Assembly: GCA_002269645.1 (NCBI GenBank)
Contig: NIVC01001115.1
Span: 1 to 62,157, forward strand
From: Macrostomum lignano
Lineage: Eukaryota
Direction: 5' to 3'
DNA length: 62,157 bases
Translations under genes and position numbers: made by a program
Notes under the pieces: generated by a model
The model's database searches: none
What the model saw: the letters and a program-made list of their open reading frames with translations, nothing else
What the model was told of the DNA's origin: nothing
Part shown: piece after piece, positions 10,626-40,459 of the stretch
Layout: the number at the start of each line of letters is the position of its first letter
How positions within the stretch are numbered: position 1 is the stretch's first letter

Positions 10626-10643
10626 ATCCCACCGCTGCCACCA
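10626..10643 (-). promoter_or_regulatory. Primer-binding site complementary to the tRNA-Leu 3' end
   Basis: Minus strand TGGTGGCAGCGGTGGGAT, 3 nt inside the 5' LTR. It is the complement of ATCCCACCGCTGCCACCA, the 3' 18 nt of eukaryotic tRNA-Leu (AAG/TAG type) including CCA. Confidence 0.9.
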
Positions 10644-10646
10644 TTT

Positions 10647-12417
10647 TGATGTAACCGCCCTTGTCGCCTGTCCGCTCCGTAGAGAGACGAACGCATGGCT
10701 AGAGGGGGCAATGACCGTAGGCTGCCTATGACCGGGCAATGACCTGACGGACCTCCAGCACCAGACTGTCCCGCCCACATGATTAGTAGCTTTGGTAGCG
10801 CTTCGTGACCAGAGGGCCAAGGACCCACATGGACCCCACCTGTAGCCAAGGTGCAATAGTTGGTCACTCGGTCATGGTATGACCGAGTGGCTGCCACCAC
10901 TCTATGTGACCTGGCGCACCTGGATCTTTCTACCAGACCTCTCGAGGCTAGAGCCCCGCCTGGATTGGTTACCAGGGGATTTAGGCTAACAGGGGAGACG
11001 CATGCAGCCGAGTACAGGGACTCTGCTTGGGGCATGATCGGGAACTCTGGGCTCAATCCTGGAGGATTTCTCAGCAGGGGATCCTTTGTGGCTGTGAGCG
11101 AGGCTGGCTTGCGACTTTGATTACTAAGAGTAGTATGAGGCGAACATGTACTGTCTACAGTTTAGATTGCTCAGGGCGAAGGGACGCGTTAGCATGGGGT
11201 TGCAACCTTCCTACTGCCATTCTGTGCCAAGACTCGCTAATCCCTCTACTGCACGCACACGCGGCCCCGCAGCACGCACTCACAGGCGGGCTTTGCACGG
11301 GGAGAGGCCATTAGCTTACCCAAACTTCCTTATGCTTTGCCACCCCGGGAGAAGCGGACCGGCAGGGATTCGTCTTATAGACGAATGGGTCAGAGCTCAA
11401 TCTGACAGCAAGTCCAAAGAAGGACGAGGAGAGGAACAGAGATAAACTCAGTTGAGTATTCTCATGCCGAAATCGCTTCCTTTTATAGACCTCACAGCCG
11501 CCTCCTCAAGGTCGTTACCATGGCTCCCTCTCTCTGATTGGCTGCCGGCAGAATGACGTCAGAATGAGTCATGATGAGAAGCATGAGACCGGCATAGCAA
11601 CATGAGAAATCGGGAAATTGCGCAATCCGGAGGTGGGGTGGGGGGATAATTGGCGCAGCGGGTGGTCGCGAAAGTGTTGCGCAAGCAAACATTGAGAACA
11701 ATAGGGCTGGGGTCGAGAACAAAGGAATTGGAAATCGGGGATAATTGGGGAAAACTGAGAACAATGGAAAAGTAAACATTGGAGAAAAGGTGATAATTAG
11801 GTGCGAAAACGAGAACAAAAGAAAGAGAAAATCGGAGAAAATGTGATAATTGGTGGGGGTCGAGAGAACAAAAGAAGCAAAAACGAGAACAATAGAAGCG
11901 GAGGTGGGGTGGGTGTCACATGAGAAATTTGGGAAGGAGAACAATAGCGTGAGAAAAGGTTGCGCAAGAGAGGGGGATGAGTCATCGATGAGTCACCGAG
12001 GGGGAGAAGGGGTCACACGACTTGCGTCACCGTTTGGGAGTTTGAGAGGGGATGGGGAGACGGTGAGCACACAAAGTACTGTAAGTAGACACAGGGAAAG
12101 AGGGGACAGCGCAGGAAAAGAGTGCAGAGGGAGACAAAAAAGGAGGAGGTAGAGAAAGTACAGGAAGAATAGGGCGGGAACAGAAGAGATAGGGTAGAGG
12201 GGGAGGTACAGAAAGGGGTAGGGGCTCCGGAAAGGCAGGTGTGGCGGCAGGAGAGACGGGACCAAGGCAGCAGAGAGGTGCAGCAGAGCGGGAGTCTCCA
12301 GGCCCGGTCGGAGACCTGGCCGAGTCTCGACAGCTCTGTGCAGAGGGTGCACGGGATAGGAGGCACTTTCGAAAAAGTTCCCATGCCCTATCCCGCGACC
12401 AGAGCGTGGTTACATCA
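10647..12417 (-). repeat. 5' LTR (1771 bp, internally deleted form)
   Basis: Matches 537-2748 apart from a few substitutions, 1-nt homopolymer indels and a 444-bp deletion at junction 11353/11354. Confidence 0.95.
11480..11571 (-). promoter_or_regulatory. LTR core promoter cluster (TATA, CCAAT, CRE, AP-1)
   Basis: Minus-strand TATAAAAG 11487-11480, CCAAT 11541-11537, TGACGTCA 11554-11561, TGAGTCA 11565-11571. Same cluster at 1812-1903 in the other LTR. Confidence 0.65.
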
Positions 12418-12977
12418 CGACGCTAAATCAGTGATGAGTCAGGACTGTTTCGCGCAAATTATTCTTCTATTCATTACTAGAGTTATCAGTTATGACTTAT
12501 GATTAACCAATGTTGGTGGAGACCAAACGTGAAATGTACATAATGTTCGTACGGCAAAATTGCATGTAGATATTTAAGAACGTATATTCCTAAACTCACA
12601 CACCATGGTTAGGTCATCCATGTCCCATGGGTCCATAAACTATCATGGATGGCTATGGTGCTTTCATGCATGGACCGTTATTTCGTTCAAGTTTAAAAAA
12701 TAAGAACTTTGAAGTACATATAGCTACGCACCGTTTAAAGTGGTGGTTGCAACATAGTTTAACAAACAGACAAATGTTCCTTCGTGTAAAAGGCTGCTTT
12801 ATGTTTAGTGCAGCTGTTAAATAGCTTTTAATATAGAAAAAAATTCATCTCGTTTTTGAAACCTTTGGTAATACATACCCAAAATTTGTACCTCACACAA
12901 TTTTGTATTTTTGCGAAACATGGAATATGGATCGAAATCTATAAATGACCCGCATTCGAACTCCAACTCCAACTATA

Positions 12978-15780: not shown

Positions 15781-18700
15781 TTACTCTTCGCGCTCGTGCC
15801 TATAGAGAGACAGGCAGATATTGCACACGAAGAAGCGGTTCGACTTCTTCACTACGTCAAACTGTCGAGGGGACAAGCCGACGCAAAAAGCGTGGTACCA
15901 CGCGTCACAAAGGTCACATTTTACCTACATGGAATCAATTTTAAATATGGGGTCTGATATGAATTCTGAAGGAAATTAAAGATTTGTCGCTTATGTATTA
16001 TATACTTAGCTATACTGAAGCCTGCACATAATTTTTACCACACTTTCAAATAGATGAGCTCACCCAATTGCGCAGTGAATTCGCTTGTGATGTTTCATGG
16101 CAACTGCTGCATCTGCTTGAGTCTGGAGTTTGTTGGACGCGATTGTACTGTAAAATTGTCTGCAATATACGCAATCTGGCACACGACAAAAAGTGCTCAT
16201 CTGTGCGGAAGAGGTACGGAAGTCCCAGCATCAGGCATTTCGCGTACAGGCAGATTATGACACCGCAGTTGTAGTCGTCTGTCTGCACAGCTGCGGACGC
16301 CGATTGTGGCTGATAGACTCCCGTAAGTCGCCGAACGGTGAGATTGCTAGCGAGCCGGCTAGATGATCATAAAAATTTAGAAATATGAGTGAAATACATT
16401 TTTGCATGCACAATGACGTTTGACGTTTGATTATGCAATTGTAACACGCACCACCATGAAGCGCTCCATGTATCCATACCACGCAGTGGATCGAGAAATG
16501 TTGTCTGCTTTTTTTCTGTATCGACAACCAAGCAGACAAAGTGGGGTGGATTTTCTTGCCAGATTGGAAAGAAGAAGTAGCGGACCTGAAAGCAAATTGT
16601 AGTGATTTTTATTTATTACTCGTGGGTGTATGCACAACATAATAAATGCGTTGTCCGCGCATATAATAAAAAAACTCAAAGAGAGTATGCCTAAAGCCCA
16701 CAACCCCTTTATTAATGACTTACACGTGTCGCTGAAAAGCGTCGATTTAGGTCCCTGCGTTCATGATGTGCCTTCTTATCTTGAGCCGTTGTGAGATCAG
16801 TATAGCAAAAGCTAGTGCATTGTGATCCCTCAAATATTGCCTCGAGGTAAGCATTAATGATCTGAATGCTGATCGCCCTATTGTCGCGAAGTGAGGCGAA
16901 GTCAGAGGCGTCAATCATAGACCTTCGACTTGTTGTAAACCACGGCCATTTCATAATCTGGAATGCACTTAGTTCTACCTGTGCGCGACTACGTGAACTT
17001 TCCTTATCATCCTTATGTGCACGACGTTGTCCTTCTTGGTGTTCGTTTAATGACTGAGTTAGGACTTCCTCATCTGTGATCGAGACTGCTTTATCACAGG
17101 TTTCTTCGTCGGAAGATTGTGCTTCAGTCATATTTGCGAACGATCCAGGTCTGGCGTCAAGGTAATCGTGCGCGACGATCGTGATCTTGCTTGGACCAAC
17201 GTACTTTGCCTTTTTTCGTGGACGCCAAACGTCCTCAGCCCACGATGGATCTTCCGATCGCTTCTTGGTATTAATATAGCTTCGTGGCATACCAAATTGA
17301 CACCGCTTGTTAATTTCTAGATGTTGTCTAGTCCGCTCTAAAAGTGCAGTCACGAAGTCTGGTGCACGAAGTCCTTTTTTGCCGTGTAGCACATCATACT
17401 TAATACTCCTAAAGTAATTTTCGGCTGTCACATTCGAAAACCATGATTTCCTTAACTCAAATTGGCTTTGGTTCTCAATCACAAAATGACCCCAAATAAG
17501 AGCCAGAGGAAGCCACTTTTCAACAAGGAGCGCAGTCAACATTTCAGAATACTGCGGATTCGTGGTTGGGCCGTCTGTGGCGTCATGGCAAACACTGCCG
17601 ACAAACTTGGCAAAAAATGGCGATTTTTGACGAATGCTAGAAGCATTAATTACGGTTTCCTTGAGCAAAAACTTGCTAGACGCCTTGTCGGCATCCCTTG
17701 GATTAGAGTCTTCTGGAACATCAATTGTTCGCCAGAGAGCAACTCGTTCAGCTAGCGATCTCAGCACATGTGGGACTGAACGTCGTGAACTAAATAGTTT
17801 AACAGCTAGTTCAGCTGAGCTTACAAAAGCAGTATACGACTTGCTGTATATCAACAGTACGAAAACACGGATGAAAAAATGTCTCGTTCGAGCGTCGATA
17901 CTTGCAAATTTCGGCTTTTTTAATGTTCGACATACTGTTGCAATGACGTGATTCGTACACAAGAAAGGCATTGACTTGACGGAATCGGCTGAGTTTTCGA
18001 AATGTTCAAAATGACGCTGAAGTAAATCACTAATGTCCATTCGGCAAAAGCTACCACAAACAGCAAAAATAAGTGCCCAGGAAAAATCAGTAACGACAAT
18101 CCCAACAGGGGGAATTGATCGAGCATGGAGCCTGTTTATAGCGTAGAAAACTTGCAACAAGAAATTGTGCACATTTTCTGTGTTATGTGACGTTAGGACA
18201 GCATCAGCAATGTTGACTGGAAGTGATTCATGCGGACTCTCGAGCGTCAACGAGTAGAGAAATGGCTGGCCTTTTACGTAGTGCACTTTTTTACAATACC
18301 ACCGGTGGCATCAAAATGCAACACATGACTTTTGCCTGTGCACTCGAGCAGAGTTCTGAGTTGCTCCTCACAAAACATTGTGAATTGAAACGGACGAGCA
18401 GTCACTGTTTGAATGTACCCTTTCAGGGTCTTCTCTGAGGTGGCACTATCAAAGGCTTCCTTGTAGTTCAAAAGGGTAAGTAGTACACGTTCCCCAAAGC
18501 GTAGCACCGATGAACGATCCGAACCCGCTAACATGCGATTCCGCCTGTGCCGATTTTTGGTTCCGACTTGTTTGAAGTTTTTAGCGTTCAAAAGAGACGC
18601 ATCTGCACGGAGAAGTTTTTCGTTAAAAACTTGATTGCCAGTTTTTGATGGCGATGGATTTTTGTTTAGTTTGTTGAGCATTTCTTGTGTTTCCAAAGCA

Positions 18701-20448
18701 GAACTCCGTCGACACAGCGAATTCAGGTGATGCTCCTCATCAACTTCGTATACATGCACTGTTCCAGATGCAGTAGAATCTAAGGCTGACTTGAAAATTA
18801 CGGCTTGGAATGTTTTACATGATGGGTGCTGGCAGTGCATTGTCTGCTTTATCCAAATTGGACCATTGCGGGACCTTGAGTATACGTATCTTTTGTCGAA
18901 GATAATGATACAGTTTGTTCGTCGTTCCAGTTCGTTGCGCAGGAAGTCCCTCCAGTAGTTGGCAAGCTGTTCGGGAAATGACTTTGCTTCAAATCCAGAC
19001 TTGAGAATAGAATGCCACAGTTGTGGGTCAGAAATTTCAACGGCACACAAGTGCTTATGGTTCTCTTCTTGGAGCGAATTTTTGCCTTGGCAGCCAACTG
19101 TATTGTTGCAGTCATTATCCGCCTCCTGATTGTCCTTTTCACTGCAATCCCCGATGGTACTCTCGTCGCTGATTTCTCTAACTAGGCTTTCACTTATCGG
19201 GTTGTCATCTGTGCTGCTTTCACTTGTCTGAGCGTCATCCGTGCTGCTTTCATTAGCCTCTGTCTCTGTGCGATCTCCGCAGCCCTTGCTGCCATTGGCG
19301 GTGCCATCTGCGCTGCCTTCGCTGCTATTGGTGTCATCTGCGCAGCCTTCGCTGCCTTCGCTGCCATCTTCGCTGCTTTCACTACCATGAGTGTCATCTG
19401 CACTGCCTTCGCTGCCATCGTCGCTGCTTTCACTACCATGAGTGCCATCTGCACTGCCTTCGCTGCCATCGTCGCTGCTTTCACTACCATGAGTGCCATC
19501 TGCACTGCCTTCGCTGCCATCGTCGCTGCTTTCACTACCATGAGTGTCATCTGCGCTGCCTTCGCTGCCATCGTCGCTGCTTTCACTACCATGAGTGTCA
19601 TCTGCGCTGCCTTCGCTGCCATCGTCGCTGCTTTCACTACCATGAGTGCCATCTGCACTGCCTTCGCTGCCATCGTCGCTGCTTTCACTACCATGAGTGT
19701 CATCTGCGCTGCCTTCGCTGCCATCGTCGCTGCTTTCACTACCATGAGTGCCATCTGCACTGCCTTCACTGCCATCGTCGCTGCTTTCACTACCATGAGT
19801 GCCATCTGCACTCCCTTCGCTGCCATCGTCGCTGCTTTCACTACCATGAGTGCCATCTGCACTGCCTTCACTGCCATCGTCGCTGCTTTCACTACCATGA
19901 GTGCCATCTGCACTGCCTTCACTGCCATCGTCGCTGCTTTCACTACCATGAGTGTCATCTGCGCTGCCTTCGCTGCCATCGTCGCTGCTTTCACTACCAT
20001 GAGTGCCATCTGCACTGCCTTCGCTGCCATCGTCGCTGCTTTCACTACCATGAGTGCCATCTGCACTGCCTTCACTGCCATCGTCGCTGCTTTCACTACC
20101 ATGAGTGCCATCTGCACTCCCTTCGCTGCCATCGTCGCTGCTTTCACTACCATCAGTGTCATCTGCGCTGCCTTTGCTGCCCTTTGAATCATCAAGTGTG
20201 CCATTTGTGCAACCATTGGCATCTTTGCGGATGTTGCAGCAATTCTTAAGGCTTTTCTGGCATTGTGACACAGAAGCTTTAAACCGAAGGGTGGCAGTTT
20301 GAATCCGCATTCGATTTTTTGCGTTGTTTACTGTTCTGAGTTTGCGGCAGATTTTCCCCCAACAACTGGAACTACTTCTCCAGCTACATGTAAGGCATGG
20401 TGGGTTCTGCAGCAAGACTTGCTGTAGCTGTTCCTGCAATTTGTTCAA
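15781..20448 (-). CDS. Spliced MULE transposase fused to Ulp1/C48 cysteine protease and PHD finger (5' end uncertain; 1-nt frameshift at 18286-18292)
   Basis: DDE: HFDATGG (about 18310), VTDFSWAL, CxxH LCTNH, TAENYF. Phase-0 GT-AG intron 16723-16586 joins ..ATR to VRYFFFPIWQENPPHFVCLVVDTEKKQTTFLDPL (protease His and Asp). QTDDYNCG gives Gln/Cys. Phase-0 intron 16063-15925 joins CSSC..W to VKCDLCDAWYHAFC..CNIC (C4HC3 PHD), stop at 15781. The small intron near 16360-16420 is not precisely placed. Confidence 0.85.
19335..20170 (-). repeat. Coding 51-bp tandem repeat, about 16 copies (GSESSDDGSEGSAD[G/D]TH)
   Basis: Unit gccatcgtcgctgctttcactaccatgagtgccatctgcactgccttcgct, in frame within the 724-aa ORF. 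Confidence 0.95.
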
Positions 20449-21393
20449 ATAGTATTTAATCCATATTAACTTTTAACACAATTTGATGACATTGTTCGAA
20501 AATGCTTACAATGAATCATACTTTTTAGGTTCACAGCAAAAATGGATTTAACTGAATATATTATATGACTCGAAGTAGACCCAAAGGTTGCAAAAAAGTA
20601 CTCACATTCAGCAGTGATCTTTGCTTCATTCAAGAGGAATCATATCAGAAAGAAAGAAATTTCAAGCAAAATAATATAATTCTTTTTAAAAGGAATGCTT
20701 TTCCACATGTAAAATAAATGCACAAATAATACGTTGATGAGCAAAATACTTTGCAATAATAGTCAATGCTATTGGGTATAAATCAACATTTAATTAGTCT
20801 TCTTACACATCAGATAAAAACTCTTTTCAGCATACATTTGTGTAAACTGTAGGCCCTGTAGCTTGTGACAAAATTGAATGGTTGAAAGAGACTTGAGTGC
20901 AGAGCAGCTCATATCTCTGATAAATAGCTAGCTATTATAGAAAAATTATCCTTGGTTACACAAAGTAATGGTATTAAATAAAATGAGCTAAATATTTCTA
21001 ATTATATAAAAATAACAAAACAATGAACTAAAAAGAAAAGAGACAAAAGAGCTCTTCCACATTATTTCTAAGTGTGTGTTATATAGAAACCCACACACTG
21101 TACAAACAGTGACTGTCAAAAATGTATTTCTGACTTCACAATGTAATGGTCAAGGTTGTATCGAAGTATTTTATTCCAATACCCTAGAATACTAGAGAAT
21201 CAAGTCCGTGTAACTGAAGACTTCAATTTCATATTCCCGCCACTTTCATTCATCGTGGAGAGGACGCACAAATATGTAGAAAACTATTTGTAGATTTCCT
21301 TTGTAAAATGTTTGTAAAATGTAAAATGTTTGTAAATGTTTGTAAAATGTTTGTAAAATGTTTTGTAAAATGTTCTTTGTAAAAACTATTTGT

Positions 21394-22170
21394 AAAATGT
21401 ATGCATTTAAATGTCCATTTCAAACTAGAGGTCAATAACTCCGAGTTGGATGCATGAATCTTGCAGAAATTGCACAGAAATGAAGATTTCTTTTGTTATT
21501 TTTGATTTCTACTTCAACTCCAAATTAGTTTTCAGTTTTGAGTGCAGCCCAGATTTTTAAACTTTTGGTTTCATACTGTAAATGCACTAAAATGTATGCA
21601 TTTAAACGCGTCCATTTAAAACTAGAGGTCAATAACTCCGAGCTGGATGCATGAATCTTGCAGAAATTGCACAGAAATGTAGATTTCTTTTGTTATTTTT
21701 GATTTTTACTTCAACTCCAAATTAGTTTTCAGTTTTGAGTGCAGCCCAGATTTTTAAACTTTTGGTTTCATACTGTAAATGCACTAAAATGTATGCATTT
21801 AAACGTCCATTTCAAACTAGAGGTCAATAACTCCGAGTTGGATGCATGAATCTTGCAGAAATTGCACAGAAATGTAGAATTCTTTTGTTATTTTTGATTT
21901 CTACTTCAACTTCAAATTAGTTTTCAGTTTTGAGTGCAGACCAGGTCTTCAAACATTTTAATAGAGTCTGTAGATGTACGGAAATTGTTGAATTTATTTC
22001 GTCTATTTTAAACTGAAGATCAATAGCAACTAGATGGATGAATGAATGTGACTGAAAAGTCACAAAAATGTAGAAAATAGTTGTTATTTTTTATTTTTAT
22101 CATCTGATTATCCCAGTTTTAGACATACGGTTAGCTTTTGAAGGATTTGAAAATTTGTTTATCTTTTCCC
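21394..22170 (-). repeat. Right subterminal array, about 2.8 x 195-197 bp plus one degenerate unit (inverted relative to left)
   Basis: Reverse complement of the left unit recurs at 21394, 21589 and 21786. A diverged unit occupies about 21950-22170. Confidence 0.9.
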
Positions 22171-22584
22171 GAATTTGGAGTTGGAGTTGGAGTTGGAGTT
22201 CGAATGCGGGTCATAATCTATAATAAAATTTAAATCTATTTTCGCTTAACAACCAAGTCGACATCGCCTTATGTAGCATTAGCTAGGTCAGAAGACCTAG
22301 TTTTTGTTTATTAGACCATGTATCCTGCAAACAGCTAGGGCCTAGTACTAACCAGTCACTTATGTAATGATGAGTCATCACTAAAATGATTTGCCAAAAT
22401 TATAGGCCTATACCAGTCAGGTGAAAAAAATGGTTAGGCAGCACCCCTCATTCATGAATATTAATGCATGAAATCCTTGTGAATTTTTTTCTTGGGTTTT
22501 TTTTCAAAATTGACTGCTAGGCCTACTACCTACAGATATCAATGTAGACTATTGTAGCTAGTATCTTATAGACTAGGCGGCTAT

Positions 22585-22683
22585 CCTGTAGTTTCGCACA
22601 TTTAATTATTTCCAGAATTATTTCGCCCTCTATTCAAGGGTGGTGGGGGGTGGGGGTTGGAATTAAACGTGCGAAACTACAGG
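22585..22683. mobile_element. 99-bp MITE-like foldback element
   Basis: 23-bp inverted repeats CCTGTAGTTTCGCAC(A/G)TTTAATT, 22 of 23 matching. No clean TSD. Confidence 0.45.
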
Positions 22684-24339
22684 TTAGCCCTAGGGTAGGC
22701 CTCTATCATGAAGTGAATGAATCTAGTTTGGCCCTATCAGCTAATGCCAATGGTCTAGGCTATCTATAGAGCCTAATTAGCTATTGTAGACCTATACTAT
22801 AGTTATTTATTAATTTATATAATAATATGGACTTCTGTGAGAATTTTTTATTTTTTATTTTTAATAATTATTTAGTCTCGACTATATGATAAATCTCATT
22901 TGTCTAAGTAAAAAATATTAGGCTTAATAAATCAAATCTCTTTGAATGAAGCCATTATAATTATTTGGCTTATGTTAATGTAACAAGGATTTTGTTCTAT
23001 CTCAAGAGCTATCTCACTGCTAATACTAAGTTGTCATAAGCTTATGCTTTTTTTTCTAGACCTATTTGCATTATATTAACCTTAGTCAGGAAAGTGCACC
23101 ATGTAAGCCACAATAAATCCTTAGTCAAATTTTTATCTATAGGCCTACACTATGTGCCTGGATGGAATTCTTGCAAAAAAATCACAACACATTATGCGAT
23201 TACACAAAAAAATGCGATTTTGCATCAAAAAATATGGAAAAAATGCGTTGCAGAATTTCAGACAAAATTGCTTATTGCTAATTTTTAATATATGCAGAAG
23301 TGTGCTTGAGATATTGGATTTTGCAAAAGATAATCCTACTAGCTAAGATCACAAAGAAAAAAAGAATGAAAAGTAAAAACTAAAGAAGGCACAAAAGTAA
23401 AAATTCGAAAAAATTCTATAAAAAGTAGAAACTCGTAACATTCTCTAACATATGTATTTGGACGAAAATTCAAATCACTACATTTTCTTAGAATGCATTT
23501 TTCATTATACTTCTTTTTTGTTCTTTCTTTTTCGTTTGTATATTTACCAAAACAAATATTTGGTAAAAAAACAAGTTTTTACCATTTTGCCACGTGCTAA
23601 GTACCAAAATAAAAAATGTGACCAATAAAAAATATTTTGCGCACCATAAAAAATTGCATAATTCTATTTGACTTAAGAAATACAAGAATTCCATCCTGGA
23701 CTATGTGCCAAGTAAAAAAGTGATATGCACCAAGAAAAAAGAAATGTATACTTTGTACTAGGCCACTTTAAAAAATATGCAACTTAAAGATTAAAGAAAA
23801 TAAGAATCATATTTTGAATTTTTTTAATGGAAATAAAATAATGATTGTCATAATATTTAAATTTTTTAGTACAAAATGTATTGTTTGTATATTTGGAAAA
23901 AACATTTTTGTGCTATTTGGACTAATTTTAATATTTGAAAAAGAAGCAAGTATGTTTACATGTCATACTTTATGTTTGGACTAAGATTTTACTATATAGA
24001 CTGTGTGCCAAATATAGCGTGCCATGTGCACCATATTGCACTATTTATGCTAGAAAATTCTGTTGCAATTATACTATAGTAAAAAATTGATAAAATCAAA
24101 TAACTGATATATGCGGAGTTGATTGCAACAAAACAGATATATAGGCATATAAAGGTAGGTTCATGTTTAAATATTAAAGGCAACAATTAGCAATAAGGTG
24201 CCAATACAATAAGGTGCAATAGTTAGTTCAATTTACTAGACTCAAGTAAATTTTCATGAGTTTAGCAAGTCACAATAGTAGGGCCAGCCAATCTAGGAAA
24301 AAAAACCAATTGTATTCCTTGTCTAACATCATGACTGTC

Positions 24340-25140
24340 TAGTTTATATAGTCCCTTAATGCCAATGGCCAATGTCTTAGAAGGTTGCTACTGCCTTGTA
24401 GTGGTTGAATTGCTCTCTTAGGAATTTCCAATGTGGCCAAATCTCTGAGCTTCACAATTAGGCCATTATTCTTGCCTAAAAATGTGGTGCATATACATGC
24501 ATAAATAAATGCAGCTGTGATTATGGATCTAGAATTTATATTCATGAGCCCTTGATATGCCTTACCTTGCATTGTATTGCATAAGTTTGTCATTGCAGAA
24601 ACAATGCCTTCAGAAAGCAATTTAAAGCAATAGAGAATTATTTACACAATATACTTTATGCCTTCAGCCATAGCATCTATCAACTCCTCAGCTCCAAGAA
24701 AGAGCAACTACAATAGCAAAGAGCAAGAGCCTTCTCCAATGATAAGTTGAATGATAGAGATAGCACAATTAACCATGATTGGTCATGCTTTGTCCCTTTG
24801 TCTAGAAAGATTGAGAATGGGATAAGATTAGTCTGATTAGACATCTTATCTGTGACACAGAACACTTGGTCCTTTTTTGCCACTAGTGCAGAGAAACATA
24901 TGCTTTCTTCCATTGATTTGGCATTGACTTTATTGCACTTCTTGGTCTATTAATTGGACTTGGATTTGAAAAATCCAGTAATTGATAGTCTTTGCCCAAC
25001 TCAATGGCCAACTAGTGCTTCTTGGTAGCAGAGTACTATTGTAAAGCAGTGATTTCATGTTGCTTAATGGATATAACTCCACAGAAAATGCACTTGGCAA
25101 CATCTGGCATTGTGGCTTTTTTGCACCATGAACTAATGAG
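24340..25140 (-). pseudogene. Heavily decayed transposase-like remnant (BED-type zinc-finger-like start)
   Basis: Manual minus-strand translation near 25130-25020 gives SWCKKATMPDVAKCIFCGVISIKQHEITALQ*YSATKKH*, resembling hAT-type C2H2 fingers, with stop codons. Resemblance only. Confidence 0.3.
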
Positions 25141-27089
25141 CTGATTATTGGCAACTATCTTTGTCTTTCAACAGCCAGTCATTGCACCAGGTAGTATTTT
25201 GAGACATTTATAAATTGCTAAAACAGTATATGATTAATAAAATTTTGGATGATTAATGGCACTTGTACCTGCACTCTGTCTCATATTATTAAGCAATTAA
25301 AAAACAGCAATTAGCAACAGTGGTGTCCAAAAAAGTTAAACAGTTTATTTCAATCTGACAATGTTAGAATAATGAACAAGGACAAGTTGCATTTACCATA
25401 TCACCTATTTCAATGGCTTAATTTATGCATAAATATAATCTGTAGAGTCAAAATGGAGGTGATGATTAGAATATTTTTAGTGTAATTTTTTAAAAAGTAT
25501 AGGTTTTCAGTGCAGTTTCCAAAATAGCATAGTGCATTGAAACAGCGCAATAGCAGTCACATTACCTAGCATAGCCTTGACCATGTATGAATAGACCAGT
25601 GCCATTGCCTGCATCACTAGCAAGGCAGCCCACCTATGCTCTAGGCTATTTATCTTTAGTTGTTGACAAAGGTGATATTTTTGGTCTTTTATTGCTTCCA
25701 CTTGGTGCCTTTGGCTGTGTTGGCAATTTATTAGTGCTTTATTTTTGTCTATGCCTGGCCCTAGCTGGAGCTTCCTTTTTTCAGATAACTTGCCAATCAG
25801 ATCTTGCAGAATATCCATAGAATGATCCATTGTATTTCTCTTTGGATAGCTCTTAAAAGTTTGTTGAATTATGTTATTGCAAGGGGTTCATATTTATAGG
25901 TGGGCTAGCAGGGAATTGGACTGCATAAATGTGTTCCTCCTTGCACCTTGGGTGGGATTGGGATATGCCAGAAATGACAGATTTGCACTATTGTTTCCGT
26001 TTTCTTTTTTTATGTTTTTTATTTTTGAGATATTTTCTTGAGTAATATGTCAAATTAAAGATTGCATGCATATATATTGTATGTATTTCTTCTAGTCTTG
26101 GGTGTTCCCAAGATTAGAGGGTTATAACCTTGGGTATTCTATAAGTATGCTTTAAAATCTACTATCTACTTTGTCTCCTGTTACTTTAGTTTTCTACTTA
26201 TCAGTAGTATATATGGTACACATTTTTTCTACTTCACTTCACTGAAAAATAAACCAAAGTTGAATTGAATTCTCAAAGTTTTTACTTAGAACAATTTTAA
26301 TAAAAGTTTTGAAACAAAACTAAAAAAAATTAAGACTGATTAAAAAATTAAGTGCAGAAAAGATTTCAAGAAATACAACACATTTAAACAAAAAAGTTTC
26401 ATTAGATTTGTACAGAAGGCTATTATCACAAGTACTAAATTTAAGCATGTTAATTGTTGTTATTCAATAAAAATAACAGAACAATTCTTTAGCTAAATAA
26501 AACATCACTAATTTTTTGTTTAAATGGCAAATTAGGCAAAAGTATGAGGTTTTTAATGGTTCAAATGCATTCAAAAAGTTGTTTTTTAGACTTTTTATCT
26601 ATAAAAATATTCTTCCATAAGCTCAAAAGGAAAATTGTATCTTGTCAGTAGAATTATATAAAGTGGGCTGGGCTTATTAAGTATTTAATTTTTCATTAGT
26701 AAATATTAATAGATGTACAATATCAGAATTTTAATATGTAGTATATAGATAGGCCATTTGCAGTATATCTTTACTAATCTTAGCATATTGACATTAATGT
26801 TGGACTTACGGTGTTTTAGGTACACAACTGAGTCAATCCCCATGATAATCAGCATAATTACCATAGTGATCAATCAACTATACTTGCAGAGAGCATAGGG
26901 CGTTCCTTGGAACTTTAGAAATCTTTATTATTGATTATATTGTGAATGTTGCGAAAAATGACAAAATTTCGTCCTCTTATTTAAAAATAGCTAAAAACTC
27001 TGATTTTGCGACTGATATAAGAGTAGATGAGCATATATTTTGCGAGTAACATATCTAGCTAATTGTCGTCGCTGTATTGACCGCTGCAG

Positions 27090-29826
27090 TCGTCGGATTC
27101 GCGTCACACTGGCATCAGCTGCGACGGCTGCGGCCAGCGCGCCTTCACCGGGCGGCGCTACAAATGCCTTCGCTGTCACGATTTCGACTTGTGCGGCCCC
27201 TGCTTTGACACCGCCAATTTTGGCGCCTCGGAATTTCGGCGAGCGGCGCGCGGCATTCCAGGCGGAGAGCACGAGGCCTCGCATCCGATGCAGTGTGTCC
27301 TGAGTCCGCAGATGCTGCGAATCTACTACTGTGAGGATTTCAGCGATCCCAGCGGCGGTGGCATTGTTCCCGGGGGTACTGGCGCCATGTCTTTCACCTG
27401 TCCATTGTGCGGCCGGCTGGGTCTGTCCGAGAATGGCCTGGCGGATCACGTTGTGTCCGAGCATGCGGACGATTCCGTGAGTTTTCTGAACTGCATTCTG
27501 CTCAAGTTTTTAGTTGCGGGTCAAAGATTTGGGATTAGGGATCTAAGATTGGAATTGGGGATCTAAGATTGGTATTTAATGGATATAAGATGCGGATTTT
27601 ATGGATCTAAGATTGGGATTGGGGATCTAAGATTGGTATTTTATGGATCTAAGATTAGTATTTTATGGATCTAAGATTGGGATTTTATGGATCTAAGATT
27701 GGGATTTTATGGATCTAAGATTAGTATTTTATGAATCTAAGATTGGTATTTTATGGATGTAAGATTGGTATTTTATGGATCTAAGATTGGGATTTTATGG
27801 ATCTAAGATTGAGATTTTATGGATCTAAGATTGGGATTTTATGGATCTAAGATTGGTATTTTATGGATCTAAGATTGGTATTTTATGGATCTAAGATTGG
27901 TATTTTATGGATCTAAGATTGGGATTTTATGTATCTAAGATTGGGATTTTATGTATCTAAGATTGGTATTTTATGGATCTAAGATTGGTATTTTATGGAT
28001 CTAAGATTGGGATTTTATGGATCTAAGATTGGGATTTTATGTATCTAAGATTGGGATTTAATGGATCTAAGATTGGGATTAGGGATGTAAAATTGAGATT
28101 TTATGGATCTAAGATCGGGATTTTATGGATCTAAGATTGAGATTTTATGGATCTAAGATCGGGATTTTATGGATCTAAGATTGGGATTTTATGGATCTAA
28201 AATTGGGATAAGGGATCTAAGATTGGGATTTTATGGATCTAAAATTTGGGATAAGGGATCTAAAATTAGGACTTCTTGCCCCAACGTCCCCCAACCCGCC
28301 AGGCCGGTCCGGACGTTGTCTGCCCAGTCTGCGCCTGCGTGCCCAGCAGCGGCCCCTGCCCGCGCATGCGCAGCCTTGTGCGCCACCTGCTGCGCGACCA
28401 CGCCGCCGACGCCGCCGCAACAGCCGCAGCGGCAGCCGCTTCAGGCGGCGCCTCCTCCGCTGCCGCCGCAGCCGCCGCGGCGAACCGACGACGCCACCCC
28501 GCCGGCGACCCGATCACGGAGCTGCTGGCTCAGCTGGGCGGCAGGGCGCCGTCCAATTTGGAGTTGCAGCTGCGCAGGTCGCGCCTTCTCGAACGGCATC
28601 CGATGATATCCGGCAGTTCCACGGCGACGGCTACGGCGACGGCTACGTCTACAGCGACTGCGGGCGCTGCTGCATCGGCGCCGGCTGCAGAGACAGCACA
28701 GGCCGTGGCTAGTAAAAAACAGCAGCAGCAGCAGCAGTCACATAGCCAGCGGTATCCGCTGCTGCACGCTCTGGCTGCCGCTGATGCATCGGCCGCAGCC
28801 AACTCCGAAGCTGCTGCTGCCCTTGATGCCCAGGTAATTGGCGGTTTTCGCTTTTGAAATTCAGAATTTCGGGTTTCCAGATGCGGGGTATTGGGATTCT
28901 GAAATGGGGTATTGGGATTCTGAAGGGGGTATTGGGATTCAGAAGTGGAGTATTGGGATTCTGAAGTGGGTATTGGGATTCTGAAATGGGGTATTTGGAT
29001 TCTGAAGTGAGGTATTGGGATTCTAAAGTGGGTATTGTGAATCTGAAGGGGGGTATTGGGATTCAGAAGTGAGGTATTGGGATTCTAAAGTGGGTATTGT
29101 GAATCTGAAAGGGTATTGGGATTCAGAAGTTGGGTATTGGGAGTCTGAAGGGGGTATTGTGAATCTGAAGGGGGTATTGGGATTCAGAAGTGGAGTATTG
29201 GGATTCTGAAATGGGGTATTAAGATTATGAAATGGGGTATTGAGATTCAGAAGTGAGGTATTGGGATTCTGAAGTGAGGTATTGGGATTTTGAAGTGGGT
29301 ATTGGGATTCAGAAGTGAGGTATTGGGATTCTGAAGTGAGGTATTGGGATTCTGAAGTGGGTATTGGGATTCAGAAGTGGGGTATTGGGATTCTGAAGTG
29401 AGGTATTGGGATTCTGAAGTGGGTATTGGGATTCTGAAATGGGGTATTGGGATTGAGAAGTGAGGTATTGGGATTCTAAAGTGGGTATTGTGAATCTGAA
29501 GGGGGTATTGGGATTCAGAAGTGGGGTATTGAGATTCTGAAATGGGGTATTGGGATTCTGAAGTGGGGTATTAGGATTTAGAAGTGGGGTATTGGGATTC
29601 AGAAGCGTGGTATTGGGATTCAAAAGTAGGGTGTTGGGATCATATATTGTGGTTTGCAATTGCGATTCGGGTTAAAAATCTTGGGTGAATTATTAAATGA
29701 CCTGACAAAGCCTGCAGTAGAGATAAGATGACCTTTCTTTTCCCGATTCACCAGGTCGCCAGTCGCCTTGCAGCTCAGCTGACCAACGGATTGCTGCAGC
29801 TTGGCGACTTTGATGACGCCGCGTGA
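27090..29826 (+). CDS. KCMF1: KCMF1-like E3 ligase (ZZ zinc finger + Di19-type C2H2 fingers); exons about 27090-27476, 28303-28833, 29755-29826
   Basis: [62 protein letters not shown] | [20 protein letters not shown] parallels KCMF1. Phase-0 GT-AG junctions. Start codon not found; last exon less certain. Confidence 0.85.
27525..28270 (+). repeat. Intronic minisatellite, 22-bp unit GGATCTAAGATTGG(G/T)ATTTTAT
   Basis: Direct tandem array inside the KCMF1-like intron. Confidence 0.95.
28880..29640 (+). repeat. Intronic minisatellite, about 21-bp unit GGGGTATTGGGATTCTGAAGT
   Basis: Direct tandem array inside the next intron. Confidence 0.95.
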
Positions 29827-30049
29827 CTGATGCAGTTTTGGCACGCCTGATTTTACCTGGAACTGTCGTCAGCTTATAGAGATTGTAATTTAATTTGAAG
29901 TAAGATCGTTTCAAAATATTTTGTTTCTGTTAGGTGAGACTGTTTCCTGACTAAAATGCTGTTCATTCTCTTAGCTGGTCATGCTCTCGTATCGGTATGA
30001 CCTCATCCTGTCCTGTAGTACAATCCTGATCATCAATCATTTTTCAGTA

Positions 30050-30490
30050 TTATGACCCTCTCAATCTGCTCATTGTTCAGTAGCAGCATGACCCCCTCAA
30101 TCTGCTCATTGTTCAGTAGCAGCATGACCCCCTCAATCTGCTCATTGTGACATGGGCATGACGCCATGACCCCTAATCTGCTCATTCTGACATAAACATG
30201 ACCCCTAATCTGCTCATTCTGACATAAACATGACCCCTAATCTGCTCATTCTGACATAAACATGACCCCTAATCTGCTCATTCTGACATGAGCATGACCC
30301 CTAATCTGCTAATTCTGACATGAGCATGACCCCTAATCTGCTCATTCTGACATGGCATGACCCCTAATCTGCTCGTTCTGACATGAGTATGACCCCTAAT
30401 CTGCTCATTCTGACATGGCATGACCCCTAATCTGCTCATTCTGACATAAACATGACCCCTAATCTGCTCATTCTGACATGACCATGATCA
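30050..30490 (+). repeat. Minisatellite, about 32-bp unit CATGACCCCTAATCTGCTCATTCTGACATAAA
   Basis: Direct tandem array. Confidence 0.95.
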
Positions 30491-30954
30491 CAAGTTCCCA
30501 TAATCTGGTCATGCACAACCCCAGTCTGTCCTTCATAAGGATTAAAACTATTATTAACAATTTGATATCACGGCGCTTTCACACTCAAGTTAGCCGGCGT
30601 TACGTGTGCTCTGATTGCTAATATTTACCTTCAGCCCTTATGGAGTACCCTGCTCTGCTCATATAAATCAATTTAGTGAAGTTCGGAAATTCTGTTAGAC
30701 AAAGCAGTGTGTAAATTATTATAATATTTATTATAGAGATGTGTTAGTCTTTCTGCGACCCCATTATCTCTGATTCTATCTATAGAATCAACTTCAAGAT
30801 AATTGTATTCTAACTAACATTGCTGACAATAATAAATTATTATTGACATTTTTATAGCTATTAGTTAATATGCTGCTTAATTCGTTATTTCTCTATACTC
30901 TGCAGTTTTTTACATGTTATTCAAGCTGTCATTTTAAAGAGGAATCTTACTTTG

Positions 30955-32030
30955 TGTATGCACCCTTATATCTAGATCCTTATTTTAAGTAATAATCACC
31001 CATATATCTAGATCCTTATTTTAAGTAATAATCACCCATATATCTAGATCCTTATTTTGAGTAGGCACCCTTATATCTAGATCATCATTTTGAGCATATC
31101 TAGATCCTCATTTTCAGTAGGCACCCTTATATCTAGTTTCTCATTTTGAGCATATCTAGATCCTCATTTTGAGTAGGCACCCATATATCTAGATCCTCAT
31201 TTTGAGTAGGCACCCTTATATCTAGTTCCTCATTTTGAGCATATCTAGATCCTCATTTTGAGTAGGCACCCTTATATCTAGTTCCTCATTTTGAGCATAT
31301 CTAGATCCTCATTTTGAGTAGGCACCCATATATCTAGATCCTCATTTTGAGTAGGCACCCTTATATCTAGATCCTCATTTTGAGTAGGCACCCTTATATC
31401 TAGTTCCTCATTTTGAGCATATCTAGATCCTCATTTTGAGTAGGCACCCTTATATCTAGTTCCTCATTTTGAGCATATCTAGATCCTCATTTTGAGTAGG
31501 CACCCATATATCTAGATCCTCATTTTGAGCATATCTAGATCCTCATTTTGAGTAGGCACCCTTATATCTAGTTCCTCATTTTGAGCATATCTAGATCCTC
31601 ATTTTGAGTAGGCACCCTTATATCTAGTTCCTCATTTTGAGCATATCTAGATCCTCATTTTGAGTAGGCACCCATATATCTAGATCCTCATTTTGAGTAG
31701 GCACCCTTATATCTAGATCCTCATTTTGAGTAGGCACCCTTATATCTAGATCCTCATTTTGAGCATATCTAGATCCTCATTTGGGCATATCTAGATCATC
31801 ATTTTGAGTAGGCACCCTTATATCTAGATCCTCATTTTGAGCATATCTAGATCCTCATTTTGAGCATATCTAGATCCTCATTTTGAGCATATCTAGATCC
31901 TCATGTTGGGCATATCTAGATCATCATTTTGAGTAGGCACCCTTATATCTAGATCCTCATTTTGAGCATATCTAGATCCTCATTTTGAGCATATCTAGAT
32001 CCTCATTTTGAGTAGGCACCCATATATTTC
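30955..32030 (+). repeat. Minisatellite with mixed 33-bp and 23-bp units (core ATATCTAGATCCTCATTTTGAG)
   Basis: Long (..TAGGCACCCTT..) and short variants often alternate as 56-bp dimers. Confidence 0.95.
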
Positions 32031-37728: not shown

Positions 37729-40459
37729 TCAGGAGATTAAACACTTTTTGCCGCCACCTGACGAATCCATTTTGTCCTTCGTTGTTGCCGAATTGCAGCC
37801 TGCCTGGTCTGCTGTCGGGTTCTCGGTGAATGTGCGAATCGCTGTGGTGAATACGGTCTCCAGGGTGTCCTTGAATGCCAAGGGTTGGGTTGGGGAATGC
37901 CAAGAGAGCATGTCGCTAAGGGAGAGCGTGGCACCAAATGAAAGACATGGCGCTAAATGAGAGACAGCATGGCGCCAAATTAGAAACAGCATGGCGCTAA
38001 ATGAGACAGCATGGCGCTAAAGAAGAGACATAAAATGAGTCATAGAAGGGGAACAAGGTGAAATCTCACTCCCATTTACCTTATCCATACTTGAGCACTC
38101 CAGGTACTGATAAGCTCGAATCTTCTTAGCCAACTTGGCTCCCATCTTGCTGCTAATCTCTGTTTCGCTGATTCGCTTAGCAGAATTTCGGCTACCGACC
38201 TCTTCGTCAACTACCGCCGACAGCTTCGCGCTGGCGTCCTGTGGCTGCTTTCGCAGGTCGGTCTTTGTTCCAACTAAGAGCAGAGCAGCGTCTGGGCACG
38301 TGCGCGCCATGAACGGCAGCCAGTGCGACTCCACGCTGTTGTAGGACTCCTTGTCCACCACGGAGAAGCAGACTAGCAGGCAGTCGGCGCCGGTGCAGTC
38401 GTAGGCGCGCAGCTCTTCGGCTTCTGGCGCCCCGCGCGTGTCCTTGATTGTCAGGGTGATGCAGGTGCCGCTGTCCCCGCTGGGAACGATGAACGGTCTG
38501 TCAAGGAGCGGCGGCGGTACGTGTTATGAATTTCTCGAGTTGGATCATCAGGCAGGGCCTCCGCCAGCCTCCCAGATCCTCGTTGAGCCACACCCAGATC
38601 TTCGTTGCCGGTATTTATACTACTGATCTCCGGGTCTTCCACTCTCCCCCGGAGATTGGGAAGTGCTTTGGAAACTTTGCTCGGAGATCCGAAAAAAGGA
38701 ATTCCTGAGATGCTTTTGCGATCTGAACTCGGCGCGCGATCTCCTGGGGGTGGGGTGGGAGGTTCTAAGCTGCGCTGCTCTCTCAGGCCCGTTTCCAGAA
38801 TTCTAAGTGAAACCGAAATATTCATTTCAGAAACAGATTCGCTGTAGTAAATCGGGCTACTGATCTCCTGGAGTAATTTCTGATGAGCTGTACAAAAGGT
38901 GCAGGATGGTGAAAAGACCAGTTTTCTACGTTCAATGATAAATTTTAGGAAGCACGAGAAAAAACCATCCTCCGATTATTTTCTGCATGATTTGGCCAGT
39001 TTCTAGTTTTAGTAGTCCCTGGGTTGTCACTGCAGTAAATTCAAATAAACTTAAAGATCTCTGAATTTCTAAGAATCTCTTGACAAGAAGAGGCTCGCTT
39101 GTTGACTACTTCGCGATCCTTGAGCACGATGAAATGACAGTCTTTGCGATTGGCGTCAGCTTTAAATTAGCTTTTTCACCTGACTAAGAGTTTTTGGGAT
39201 GCTGATGCATTGCGGAGTTAACACGTATGCAAAATCTTGCGTCAGAGATTAACCCCACATGGCACTTTGGGCAGGTCCTATTCTCGTAGGGGATCATTGG
39301 TCTCGCAGTCATCATTGTTTCGCACGCTAGTTAATGCTTTGATAATCTAAACTGTGACGGGTGCACTTTAATTCTGGATTGAATATGAACATGCGTAGCC
39401 TATTGGCTTGCTTGCACAATGTTACAATGCACATTGCATTAACCATCGGGGAGATCGATAACCAGCGGAGATTGCAAGGCAAAACATTTCTGGTGCTCTG
39501 AGTTTTATGTTTTTTTCTTTGTTCTACGGATGGAGAACGAATAACGAAGCATTGGGGAGCCAATAAAGAAAATGGAACAAATATTCTTGAATAAACTACA
39601 TGTAGCTTCTGACTTCTCAGCCTTGACAACTCAGCAATTCCTTCCTGTAAGCCTTGACATCTCAGCAATTCCCCCCGTAAGCCTTGACATCTCAGCAATT
39701 CCCCCGAAAGCCTTGACATCTCAGCAATTCCCCCCGAAAGCCTTGACATCTCAGCAATTCCTTCCTGTAAGCCTTGACATCTCAGCAATTCCCCCCGTAA
39801 GCCTTGACATCTCAGCAATTCCCCCCGAAAGCCTTGACATCTCAGCAATTCCTTCCTGTAAGCCTTGACATCTCAGCAATTCCCCCCGTAAGCCTTGACA
39901 TCTCAGCAATTCCCCCCGAAAGCCTTGAAATCTCAGCAATTCCCCCCGAAAGCCTTGAAATCTCAGCAATTCCCCCCGAAAGCCTTGACATCTCAGCAAT
40001 TCCTTCCTGTAAGCCTTGACATCTCAGCAATTCCCCCCGTAAGCCTTGACATCTCATCAATTCCCCCCGAAAGCCTTGACATCTCAGCAATTCCTTCCTG
40101 TAAGCCTTGACATCTCAGCAATTCCCCCCGAAAGCCTTGACATCTCAGAAATTCCTTCCTGTAAGCCCTGACATCTCAGCAATTCCCCCCGTAAGCCTTG
40201 ACATCTCAGCAATTCTCCCAATCAGATGCTCAAGCCTTGGAACGCACCTGTTAGGCACATAGATGCCCGGAATGAAGCCTCTGTTCGGCTGCCAGCCTTC
40301 CACGCAGTAGGCCATCAGCATGGACGTCTTGCCAACGCCCGCGTCGCCCACAGCGCAGCATTTGAAGTTCATAAAAGACGACGAGGTGCGGCTGTTCCGC
40401 GTAGACGTCGACGAAGCCTCCAGATTGGCGCCGCCGCCGCCGCCACTGTAGCGAAGCAT
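37729..40459 (-). CDS. Atypical Rho-family small GTPase; exons about 40459-40248, 38487-38080, 37869-37729
   Basis: KCCAVGDAGVGKT (G1), DTRG (G3), LVGTKTDLR (G4), a Rho-insert-like helix, YLECSS (G5) and a C-terminal CAAX (KKCLIS*). GT-AG junctions are in frame. The exon 2 acceptor is uncertain. Confidence 0.85.
39605..40225 (+). repeat. Intronic minisatellite, about 30-bp unit AGCCTTGACATCTCAGCAATTCCCCCCGTA
   Basis: Direct tandem array in intron 1 of the Rho-like gene. Confidence 0.95.

What the first reader, a model, noticed from the sequence alone, without database searches (positions are those of the whole stretch)
27050..27135. KCMF1-like gene lacks an in-frame genomic start codon: candidate for an initiator AUG donated by a trans-spliced leader
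Seen: a CTAAT branch-like motif (about 27059) and CTGCAG| are followed directly by TCG TCG GAT TCG CGT CAC.. ([14 protein letters not shown]). An in-frame TGA sits at 27078-27080, there is no ATG between it and the exon, and upstream lies the decayed TE block. Established: KCMF1 orthologues begin M-S-R-H-E-G-V-S-C-D, and flatworm spliced leaders end in AUG, which has been shown in schistosomes to serve as the initiator Met. Inference: SL addition at 27090 gives M-SSDSRHTG in perfect frame. The second scramblase also has an in-frame AG 24 nt before its ATG (55240).
Basis: partly seen in the sequence, partly recalled or inferred. Interest (0 to 1): 0.7.

Follow-up and report, generated by a model that had tools for sequence, protein, structure and literature searches.

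The report
Flatworm KCMF1 gene borrowing its start codon
A Macrostomum lignano ubiquitin-ligase gene (KCMF1-like) has lost its own ATG by a one-base deletion and most likely takes its start codon from the AUG at the end of the trans-spliced leader, a mechanism already known in flatworms.

Summary
The window is Macrostomum lignano contig NIVC01001115.1. The gene is GenBank PAA72062.1 (Mlig031412.g1, "partial"), a ZZ + zf-Di19 KCMF1 homologue.

Exon 1 starts at 27090, directly after CTGCAG. An in-frame TGA lies 9 nt upstream, and there is no ATG before the ZZ domain.

This is not an assembly error. A homeologous copy, about 10% diverged in non-coding DNA, has the identical 5' end. Both copies keep intact ORFs (dN/dS 0.24), so the gene has stayed functional without its own ATG.

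Paralogues and most animal KCMF1s start MSRH(E/D)GVSCD. Here GAT sits where that ATG should be, and the alignment shows a single-base gap (GGATGTC versus GGAT-TC).

The published M. lignano spliced leader ends in ATG. CTGCAG fits its published acceptor motif [T/C]TNCAG, and joining at 27090 gives M-SSDSRHTG in frame. In a paralogue, the annotated CDS begins exactly after a CAG that lies 12 nt in frame upstream of its ATG.

No credible upstream coding exon exists in 6.7 kb.

No SL-joined transcript could be examined, so use of the acceptor is inferred (about 0.7). The mechanism itself was shown in schistosomes in 2006, so this is a new example of a known kind.

The parts
26880..27089 (+). Conserved upstream block: putative promoter plus short outron. 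It includes a TATAAG-like string at 27016-27021 and a stopped in-frame ATG at 27027.
   Evidence: About 97% identical to homeolog L003 with no indels (7 mismatches in about 210 nt), against about 90% for the surrounding non-coding DNA. The promoter and outron roles are inferred.
27059..27063 (+). CTAAT branch-point-like motif
   Evidence: Read. It lies 27 nt upstream of the acceptor and is identical in L003.
27078..27080 (+). In-frame TGA that closes the frame 9 nt upstream of exon 1
   Evidence: Conserved in L003.
27084..27089 (+). CTGCAG, the proposed spliced-leader 3' acceptor
   Evidence: Fits [T/C]TNCAG, the top motif at M. lignano SL acceptors (PMC8629364). It holds the only AG between the TGA and the ZZ domain and is identical in L003.
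27090..27476 (+). Coding exon 1 (129 codons): SSDS, then [10 protein letters not shown]..., the ZZ finger and the first half of zf-Di19. GT donor at 27477.
   Evidence: PAA72062.1 is annotated from 27102.
27096..27098 (+). GAT (Asp) codon at the position of the ancestral initiator ATG
   Evidence: MAFFT places a single-base gap here, GGAT-TCG versus GGATGTCC in three paralogue copies. KCMF1 representatives align their residue 2 to query residue 4 and start MSRHEGVSCD.
27477..28302 (+). Intron 1, mostly a 22-nt minisatellite (27535-28252, 33 copies)
28303..28833 (+). Coding exon 2: second C2H2 of zf-Di19 and an Ala/Thr/Gln-rich low-complexity region
   Evidence: The ...HADDS|[10 protein letters not shown] junction matches PAA72062.1.
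28834..29754 (+). Intron 2, mostly a 21-nt minisatellite (28885-29640, about 37 copies)
29755..29826 (+). Coding exon 3, ending in TGA
   Evidence: The annotated gene end of 29826 agrees.

Best explanation
This Macrostomum lignano KCMF1-like gene (Mlig031412.g1) has no start codon of its own. Its pre-mRNA starts a short distance upstream, in a conserved AT-rich promoter/outron block. The 35-nt spliced leader (...TTATTGCATG) is trans-spliced to the CTGCAG acceptor, so the mature mRNA reads ...GC AUG|UCG UCG GAU UCG CGU CAC. The leader's terminal AUG is the first AUG on that mRNA, and it initiates [15 protein letters not shown]....

The ancestral genomic ATG, still present in the paralogues as GG ATG TCC CGA CAC = MSRH, was destroyed by loss of its G. 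If the acceptor was already there, that same one-base deletion moved the leader's AUG from out of frame (7 nt upstream) to in frame (6 nt upstream).

Shown here:
- the anatomy of the site;
- the species;
- loss of the ATG in two diverged copies;
- continued purifying selection;
- the frame arithmetic;
- the absence of a good upstream coding exon.

Inferred:
- that the acceptor is used for SL addition;
- that the ribosome starts at the SL AUG;
- the order of evolutionary events.
For: Species and gene:
- 100% match to PAA72062.1 of M. lignano on NIVC01001115.1, at the same coordinates.
- ZZ and zf-Di19 domains.

Spliced leader:
- The SL is CGGTCTCTTACTGCGAAGACTCAATTTATTGCATG.
- About 30% of genes are trans-spliced.
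- The acceptor motif [T/C]TNCAG was found at 9551 of 21754 sites (PMC8629364).
- In Macrostomum the SL's terminal ATG is described as a likely translation start codon (PMC10468722).
- In S. mansoni the SL AUG is in frame in 28% of trans-spliced transcripts, and more than 40 cDNAs need it (Cheng 2006, as cited in PMC9851317).

Not an assembly error:
- Homeolog L003 (NIVC01000092.1) is identical from 27064 through the exon start, while the loci differ by about 10% elsewhere.

Still functional:
- Both ORFs are intact over 990 and 996 nt, with 10 synonymous and 7 non-synonymous changes.
- dN/dS is 0.24, binomial p = 0.0046.

Ancestral ATG:
- Three paralogue copies carry ATG TCC CGA CAC, and MAFFT gives a one-base gap in our gene.
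- 12 of the 15 KCMF1 representatives whose residue 2 aligns to query residue 4 begin MS followed by R, H, Q, V or T and then H.

Family habit:
- In paralogue L004 the annotated 5'-partial CDS begins exactly after ccctCAG, 12 nt in frame upstream of its ATG.

No upstream coding exon:
- There are 102 phase-0 ATG...GT candidates in 20400-27060.
- The best donor score is 5/7.
- None of the 25 best-scoring candidates is found exactly in L003.
- Nearly all of those 25 are AT-rich; the only ones reaching 50% GC are two 6-nt exons.
- No annotated gene lies within 6-8 kb upstream in either copy.
Against: - No transcript evidence could be consulted.
- The GenBank CDS of the two copies begin at 27102 (RHTG) and 3 nt further on (HTG), not at 27090. 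The annotators' pipeline evidently did not anchor these models on an SL peak. One explanation is that end-to-end read mapping truncates models at SL sites, and other copies are truncated too. That explanation is my inference.
- The acceptor motif is common by chance.
- With only 17 substitutions between homeologs, selection on the first 66 codons specifically (2 synonymous, 1 non-synonymous) cannot be demonstrated.
- The two protein-database searches found no transcriptome-derived copy with an SL-encoded N-terminus.
Confidence: 0.72

Rival explanations
1. The acceptor at 27090 is a cis-splice acceptor, and an unannotated upstream exon supplies an in-frame ATG.
For: CAG acceptors are shared by cis- and trans-splicing in flatworms (PMC12582326). 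The annotated models are 5'-incomplete, so an upstream exon could have been missed.
Against: - The 6.7 kb upstream is 20-42% GC, against 55-65% in the exons.
- None of the 102 phase-0 ATG...GT candidates has a consensus donor. None of the 25 best-scoring ones is found exactly in the homeolog.
- The one nearby in-frame ATG (27027) runs into stops. The only mini-intron that would skip them (GT at 27046-27047 to AG at 27088-27089) gives the wrong frame (read).
- RNA-seq-guided models of both copies contain no upstream exon.
Confidence: 0.12
2. The mRNA is not trans-spliced at 27090. Translation starts at a non-AUG codon (the in-frame CTG at 27084-27086) or at the first downstream AUG (27288), the latter giving a protein without a ZZ finger.
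For: The CTG at 27084 is in frame and downstream of the TGA. Near-cognate initiation is documented in several organisms (PMC9851317).
Against: - The CTG has a poor context (C at -3, C at +4).
- The ZZ domain upstream of Met67 is fully intact and scores E 4e-13, so it is evidently still translated.
- A conserved acceptor with a branch-point-like motif would be unexplained.
Confidence: 0.08
3. The gene is a decaying or untranslated duplicate whose start codon has been lost, made redundant by the ATG-bearing paralogues.
For: M. lignano is a hidden polyploid with many redundant copies (PMC10468722). Three copies of the paralogue with an intact ATG exist.
Against: - Both homeologs keep a 330-codon ORF with no stop or frameshift, and their only indel is in frame.
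- dN/dS is 0.24 (p = 0.005), and dS of 0.04 compares with about 10% non-coding divergence.
- Splice sites of all three exons are intact in both copies.
Confidence: 0.06
4. The missing G of the ATG is a single-base deletion error in the PacBio-based assembly.
For: The difference from the paralogues is exactly a one-base gap, and the assembly is based on long reads (PMC5730564).
Against: An independently assembled homeologous contig, which differs at many nearby positions, has the same GGATTCG.
Confidence: 0.02

Closest known systems
Flatworm mRNAs that use the spliced leader's 3'-terminal AUG as initiator methionine (Cheng, Cohen, Ndegwa & Davis, J Biol Chem 2006; 'slORFs' of PMC9851317)
   Same: - The organism is a flatworm whose SL ends in AUG.
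- The acceptor lies directly in front of an open frame that has no genomic ATG.
- The SL AUG is in frame.
- The encoded N-terminus lines up with conserved orthologues.
   Different: The species is a free-living macrostomorph rather than a schistosome. Trans-splicing and translation are not demonstrated for this gene. In addition, the ancestral ATG and the single-base deletion that removed it can be identified from paralogues.
KCMF1 (E3 ubiquitin-protein ligase, ZZ + C2H2/Di19-type zinc fingers) of animals
   Same: The ZZ + zf-Di19 architecture and the N-terminal motif SRHxG(V/I)SCD. It is 41-43% identical to the named animal KCMF1 proteins, from a sponge, lamprey, hagfish and a brittle star.
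   Different: It has Asp where the initiator Met is, three extra N-terminal residues (SSD) derived from former 5'UTR, and a C-terminal half replaced by Ala/Thr/Gln-rich low complexity. It is only 51% identical to the other M. lignano KCMF1 paralogue.
M. lignano paralogue Mlig022772.g1 / Mlig020381.g2-3 (PAA56088.1, PAA61273.1, PAA86907.1)
   Same: The same family. A CAG acceptor lies a few nucleotides upstream of the start, and the SL AUG would be in frame (12 nt).
   Different: It retains its own ATG (MSRHDGVSCD), so the SL AUG is optional there. The acceptor sits at a different distance, and one copy (L002) has CTG instead of CAG.

Membership tests
SL-AUG-initiated flatworm mRNAs | The organism has an SL RNA whose leader ends in AUG | tested here: met
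   Species identified as M. lignano. The published SL ends ...TTGCATG (PMC8629364). No SL RNA gene lies in the window itself.
SL-AUG-initiated flatworm mRNAs | The mRNA is trans-spliced at an acceptor immediately upstream of the ORF | not testable with these tools
   Only sequence-level support is available. CTGCAG fits [T/C]TNCAG, a CTAAT lies 27 nt upstream, and both are conserved in the homeolog. No RNA-seq reads were available. The annotated model starts 12 nt downstream.
SL-AUG-initiated flatworm mRNAs | The SL AUG is in frame with the ORF, with no intervening stop | tested here: met
   A junction at 27090 gives ATG|TCG TCG GAT TCG CGT CAC..., open for 330 codons.
SL-AUG-initiated flatworm mRNAs | No genomic AUG is able to start the conserved protein | tested here: met
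   The in-frame TGA is at 27078 and the first ATG is codon 67, after the ZZ cysteines. No credible upstream coding exon was found.
SL-AUG-initiated flatworm mRNAs | The protein begins with the SL-encoded Met | not testable with these tools
   This needs N-terminal proteomics or ribosome profiling.
KCMF1 family | N-terminal ZZ-type zinc finger followed by a C2H2/Di19-type zinc-binding region | tested here: met
   PF00569 E 4.2e-13 (residues 6-44) and PF05605 E 4.4e-10 (residues 101-162). The best named hits are KCMF1 proteins of sponges, echinoderms and vertebrates.
KCMF1 family | E3 ubiquitin-ligase activity | not testable with these tools
   This is a biochemical property. It is inferred only from homology.

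The most novel reading that the evidence does not exclude
This paralogue family captures a 'start-codon handover' in progress. The paralogue has both a genomic ATG and an in-frame SL AUG 4 codons upstream, which looks like a redundant intermediate. In this gene a single G deletion erased the genomic ATG and at the same stroke put the SL AUG in frame, turning 6 nt of former 5'UTR into codons. The gene then became obligately dependent on trans-splicing, and has been kept that way under selection through the genome duplication. If this pattern is general, SL-AUG dependence could be a ratchet that locks monocistronic flatworm genes into trans-splicing.
Probability: 0.5. Interest if true: 0.4.

Novelty: new member of a known kind. 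Interest (0 to 1): 0.27.

Why it matters
There are three practical consequences.
- Annotation: the GenBank "partial" CDS is probably complete once the leader's AUG is counted. Gene finders that require a genomic ATG will systematically truncate or mislabel such genes in M. lignano and other flatworms.
- Transgenesis in M. lignano: a reporter built from this promoter needs either the acceptor or an artificial ATG.
- Evolution: it is a clean, datable example, with ancestral state, mutation and selection afterwards. It shows how a monocistronic gene can become dependent on SL trans-splicing, which bears on the debated question of why such genes are trans-spliced at all.

It does not reveal a new mechanism.

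Tried and rejected
- **Assembly-error hypothesis.** Rejected, because the homeolog has the same sequence.
- **Mini-intron from the in-frame ATG at 27027.** Tested with GT at 27046-27047 and AG at 27088-27089. The 19-nt exon puts KCMF1 out of frame, so this was rejected (read).
- **Upstream coding exon.** Nothing convincing among 102 candidates.
- **SL RNA gene in the window.** None, even allowing up to 2 mismatches.
- **Per-gene trans-splicing information in the literature.** There were no full-text hits for Mlig031412 or Mlig016194. The only paper mentioning KCMF1 together with M. lignano is an unrelated abalone study. Nothing was found in the supplements held for PMC8629364, PMC5730564 or PMC5173321.
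- **Transcriptome-derived proteins carrying an SL-encoded N-terminus.** The first database search returned only the two GenBank copies.
- **Second search with exon 1 alone.** It collected only 9 candidates and missed even the identical GenBank protein, so it is uninformative.
- **Representative-library search.** It gave no closer relatives, only the canonical N-termini of distant KCMF1s.
- **Cheng et al. 2006.** The paper is not held, so its numbers are quoted second-hand from PMC9851317.
- **Collection scans.** Metagenome and bacterial-genome scans were not used, because they cannot contain flatworm transcripts.
Full report
**What is there**

The window is the first 62 kb of Macrostomum lignano contig NIVC01001115.1 (assembly Mlig_3_7, GCA_002269645.1). 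The three-exon ORF that I assembled (27090-27476, 28303-28833, 29755-29826) is 100% identical to GenBank PAA72062.1, "hypothetical protein BOX15_Mlig031412g1, partial". Its gene range in the record, 27102-29826, coincides with window coordinates. Pfam finds a ZZ finger (E 4e-13, residues 6-44) and a zf-Di19 region (E 4e-10). The best named relatives are animal KCMF1 E3 ligases.

**The observation**

- CTAAT at 27059-27063;
- CTGCAG at 27084-27089;
- exon 1 from 27090, reading [14 protein letters not shown];
- an in-frame TGA at 27078-27080;
- no ATG until codon 67 (27288), which lies beyond the zinc-binding cysteines of the ZZ finger.

The AG at 27088-27089 is the only AG between the stop codon and the ZZ domain. 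Any functional mRNA must therefore be joined there to something that carries an AUG, or use a non-AUG start.

The acceptor hexamer on its own is weak evidence. YTNCAG occurs 317 times in the window against 298 expected. The chance of one landing on one of the roughly eight admissible in-frame junctions is about 2%.

**Is the missing ATG real?**

Yes. M. lignano is a hidden polyploid, and a homeologous copy exists on NIVC01000092.1 (PAA91248.1, locus L003).
- The two loci are collinear but about 10% diverged in non-coding DNA, and L003 has a roughly 5.8-kb larger intron 1.
- Even so, the sequence from 27064 through the start of the exon is identical, including the TGA, CTGCAG and GGATTCG.
- The 210 nt upstream of the acceptor are about 97% identical with no indels. 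This suggests a constrained promoter/outron block.

**Is the gene alive?**

Both copies keep an uninterrupted ORF of about 330 codons and all splice sites. Their only length difference is an in-frame 6-nt Ala indel.

Nei-Gojobori counts give 10 synonymous and 7 non-synonymous changes. That is dS 0.040, dN 0.0097 and dN/dS 0.24. The binomial probability of so few non-synonymous changes under neutrality is 0.0046.

The ATG-less state predates the split of the two copies. The gene has therefore been maintained by selection without a genomic start codon. The substitution count is too small to show constraint on the first 66 codons separately.

**Where did the ATG go?**

A second KCMF1 paralogue is 51% identical in protein and present in three copies (L002, L004, L005). 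It reads GG ATG TCC CGA CAC GAC GGC GTC AGC TGC GAC = MSRHDGVSCD.

A full HMMER scan of 1.8 billion representatives shows many KCMF1s whose residue 2 aligns to our residue 4. Of the 15 such representatives I inspected, 12 start MS followed by R, H, Q, V or T and then H, most of them MSRHEGVSCD. The ancestral Met is therefore our Asp3 codon, GAT at 27096-27098.

MAFFT aligns CGGAT-TCGCG with CGGATGTCCCG, a single-base gap. One deletion is far more parsimonious than three substitutions in one codon. The residues SSD are thus former 5'UTR.

**The proposed source of the AUG**

- The published M. lignano spliced leader is CGGTCTCTTACTGCGAAGACTCAATTTATTGCATG.
- About 30% of genes receive it.
- The top motif at SL acceptors is [T/C]TNCAG, which CTGCAG satisfies (PMC8629364).
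- Authors of the sister-species genomes describe the terminal ATG of the SL as a likely translation start codon (PMC10468722).
[quoted passage not shown] 2006, quoted in PMC9851317; also PMC5832876, and PMC12582326).

Joining the SL at 27090 gives AUG UCG UCG GAU UCG CGU CAC, that is M-SSDSRHTG, in frame.

Before the deletion, the same acceptor would have placed the SL AUG 7 nt upstream of the ATG, out of frame. After it the distance is 6 nt and in frame. This holds only if the acceptor pre-existed, which I cannot show.

**Support from the paralogue**

In L004 the 5'-partial GenBank CDS (AGRRMSRHDG...) begins on the base after ccctCAG, 12 nt upstream of the ATG and in frame with it. That is what a transcript model cut at an SL peak by the annotators' TBONE pipeline would look like (PMC5730564). 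L005 has the same CAG. L002 has CTG there. Trans-splicing just upstream of the start therefore appears to be a habit of this gene family, although the two acceptors are not at homologous positions.

**Rivals**

1. *A cis-spliced upstream exon with an ATG (0.12).*
   - The 6.7 kb upstream is 20-42% GC, against 55-65% in the exons.
   - None of 102 phase-0 ATG...GT candidates has a consensus donor. None of the 25 best-scoring ones is found exactly in L003.
   - Neither copy has an annotated gene or upstream exon within 6-8 kb.
   - The nearby in-frame ATG at 27027 is followed by two stops. The only mini-intron that could skip them gives the wrong frame.
2. *Non-AUG or downstream initiation (0.08).* The CTG at 27084 has a poor context. 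Starting at Met67 would discard an intact ZZ domain.
3. *A silent decaying duplicate (0.06).* This is contradicted by the intact ORFs and by dN/dS.
4. *Assembly error (0.02).* This is refuted by the homeolog.

**Weak points**

I could not see any RNA. The annotated CDS of the two copies start 12 and 15 nt downstream of the acceptor, so the annotators did not place an SL boundary at 27090.

I attribute this to end-to-end read mapping, under which SL-bearing reads do not map. Models of the other copies are also 5'-truncated: L002 starts 6 nt after its ATG, and L005 starts about 30 nt after. This is an inference. Literature supplements held here carry no per-gene information.

**Verdict**

The mechanism is textbook for flatworms, so this is a new member of a known kind. 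The modest added value is a readable evolutionary history: the paralogue looks like a redundant intermediate, and a one-base deletion looks like the handover event.

Noticed in passing
L004 2989-3015; L005 about 2950-2975; L002 5977-6000: In the ATG-bearing KCMF1 paralogue, a CAG acceptor lies 12 nt in frame upstream of the ATG. The GenBank CDS of PAA56088.1 starts exactly after it (AGRRMSRH...). If that mRNA is trans-spliced, the SL AUG would add MAGRR to the N-terminus. Copy L002 has CTG instead of CAG, so that copy may have lost the acceptor.
   Followed up: partly
window 53422-53472 and 55238-55267: Both tandem scramblase genes (Pfam PF03803) have a CAG acceptor upstream of their ATG with an open, in-frame stretch between. 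For the first it is CTGCAG, then 42 nt, then the ATG at 53470. For the second it is TGTCAG, then 24 nt, then the ATG at 55265. If they are trans-spliced there, the SL AUG would extend both proteins. By chance this is not unlikely, about 0.2 each.
   Followed up: partly
window 592-12422, minus strand: A Ty3/gypsy-type LTR retrotransposon with an uninterrupted 1553-codon pol ORF (3665-8323; RT, RNase H and integrase domains). It is flanked by near-identical blocks of about 2 kb (592-2828 and 10610-12422) that look like its LTRs.
   Followed up: partly
window 27535-28252, 28885-29640, 30037-32027: Large minisatellite arrays fill both KCMF1 introns (22-nt unit x33 and 21-nt unit x37) and the DNA downstream (32-33-nt and 56-nt units). 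They are shared, with length differences, by the homeolog.
   Followed up: partly
L003 8816-14646 versus window about 27946-27971: Intron 1 of the homeologous KCMF1 copy is about 5.8 kb longer than in the window. This is an insertion or expansion of unknown content.
   Followed up: no
window 46939-48420 and 50809-52140, minus strand: Two tandemly duplicated GC-rich ORF pairs (for example the 274-aa and 231-aa ORFs) that end in near-identical C-terminal sequence. They have no Pfam match. One ORF contains a signal-peptide-like stretch (LLVLLACLVAAATA).
   Followed up: no
window 16715-20472, minus strand: Two long adjoining ORFs (532 and 732 aa) without Pfam hits. The 19200-20200 stretch is a GC-rich, strongly skewed repetitive coding-like region. 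This may be another mobile element.
   Followed up: no
window 38020-38523 (-) and 43597-46011 (+): A Ras-family GTPase exon, syntenic with the Ras gene downstream of the homeolog in L003, and a single-exon M13 (neprilysin-like) peptidase ORF of 805 codons.
   Followed up: partly
(tool behaviour): The word-indexed protein search with the 129-aa exon-1 peptide collected only 9 candidates. It did not return PAA72062.1, which is identical over 125 residues. Negative results from that tool for short queries should not be trusted.
   Followed up: no
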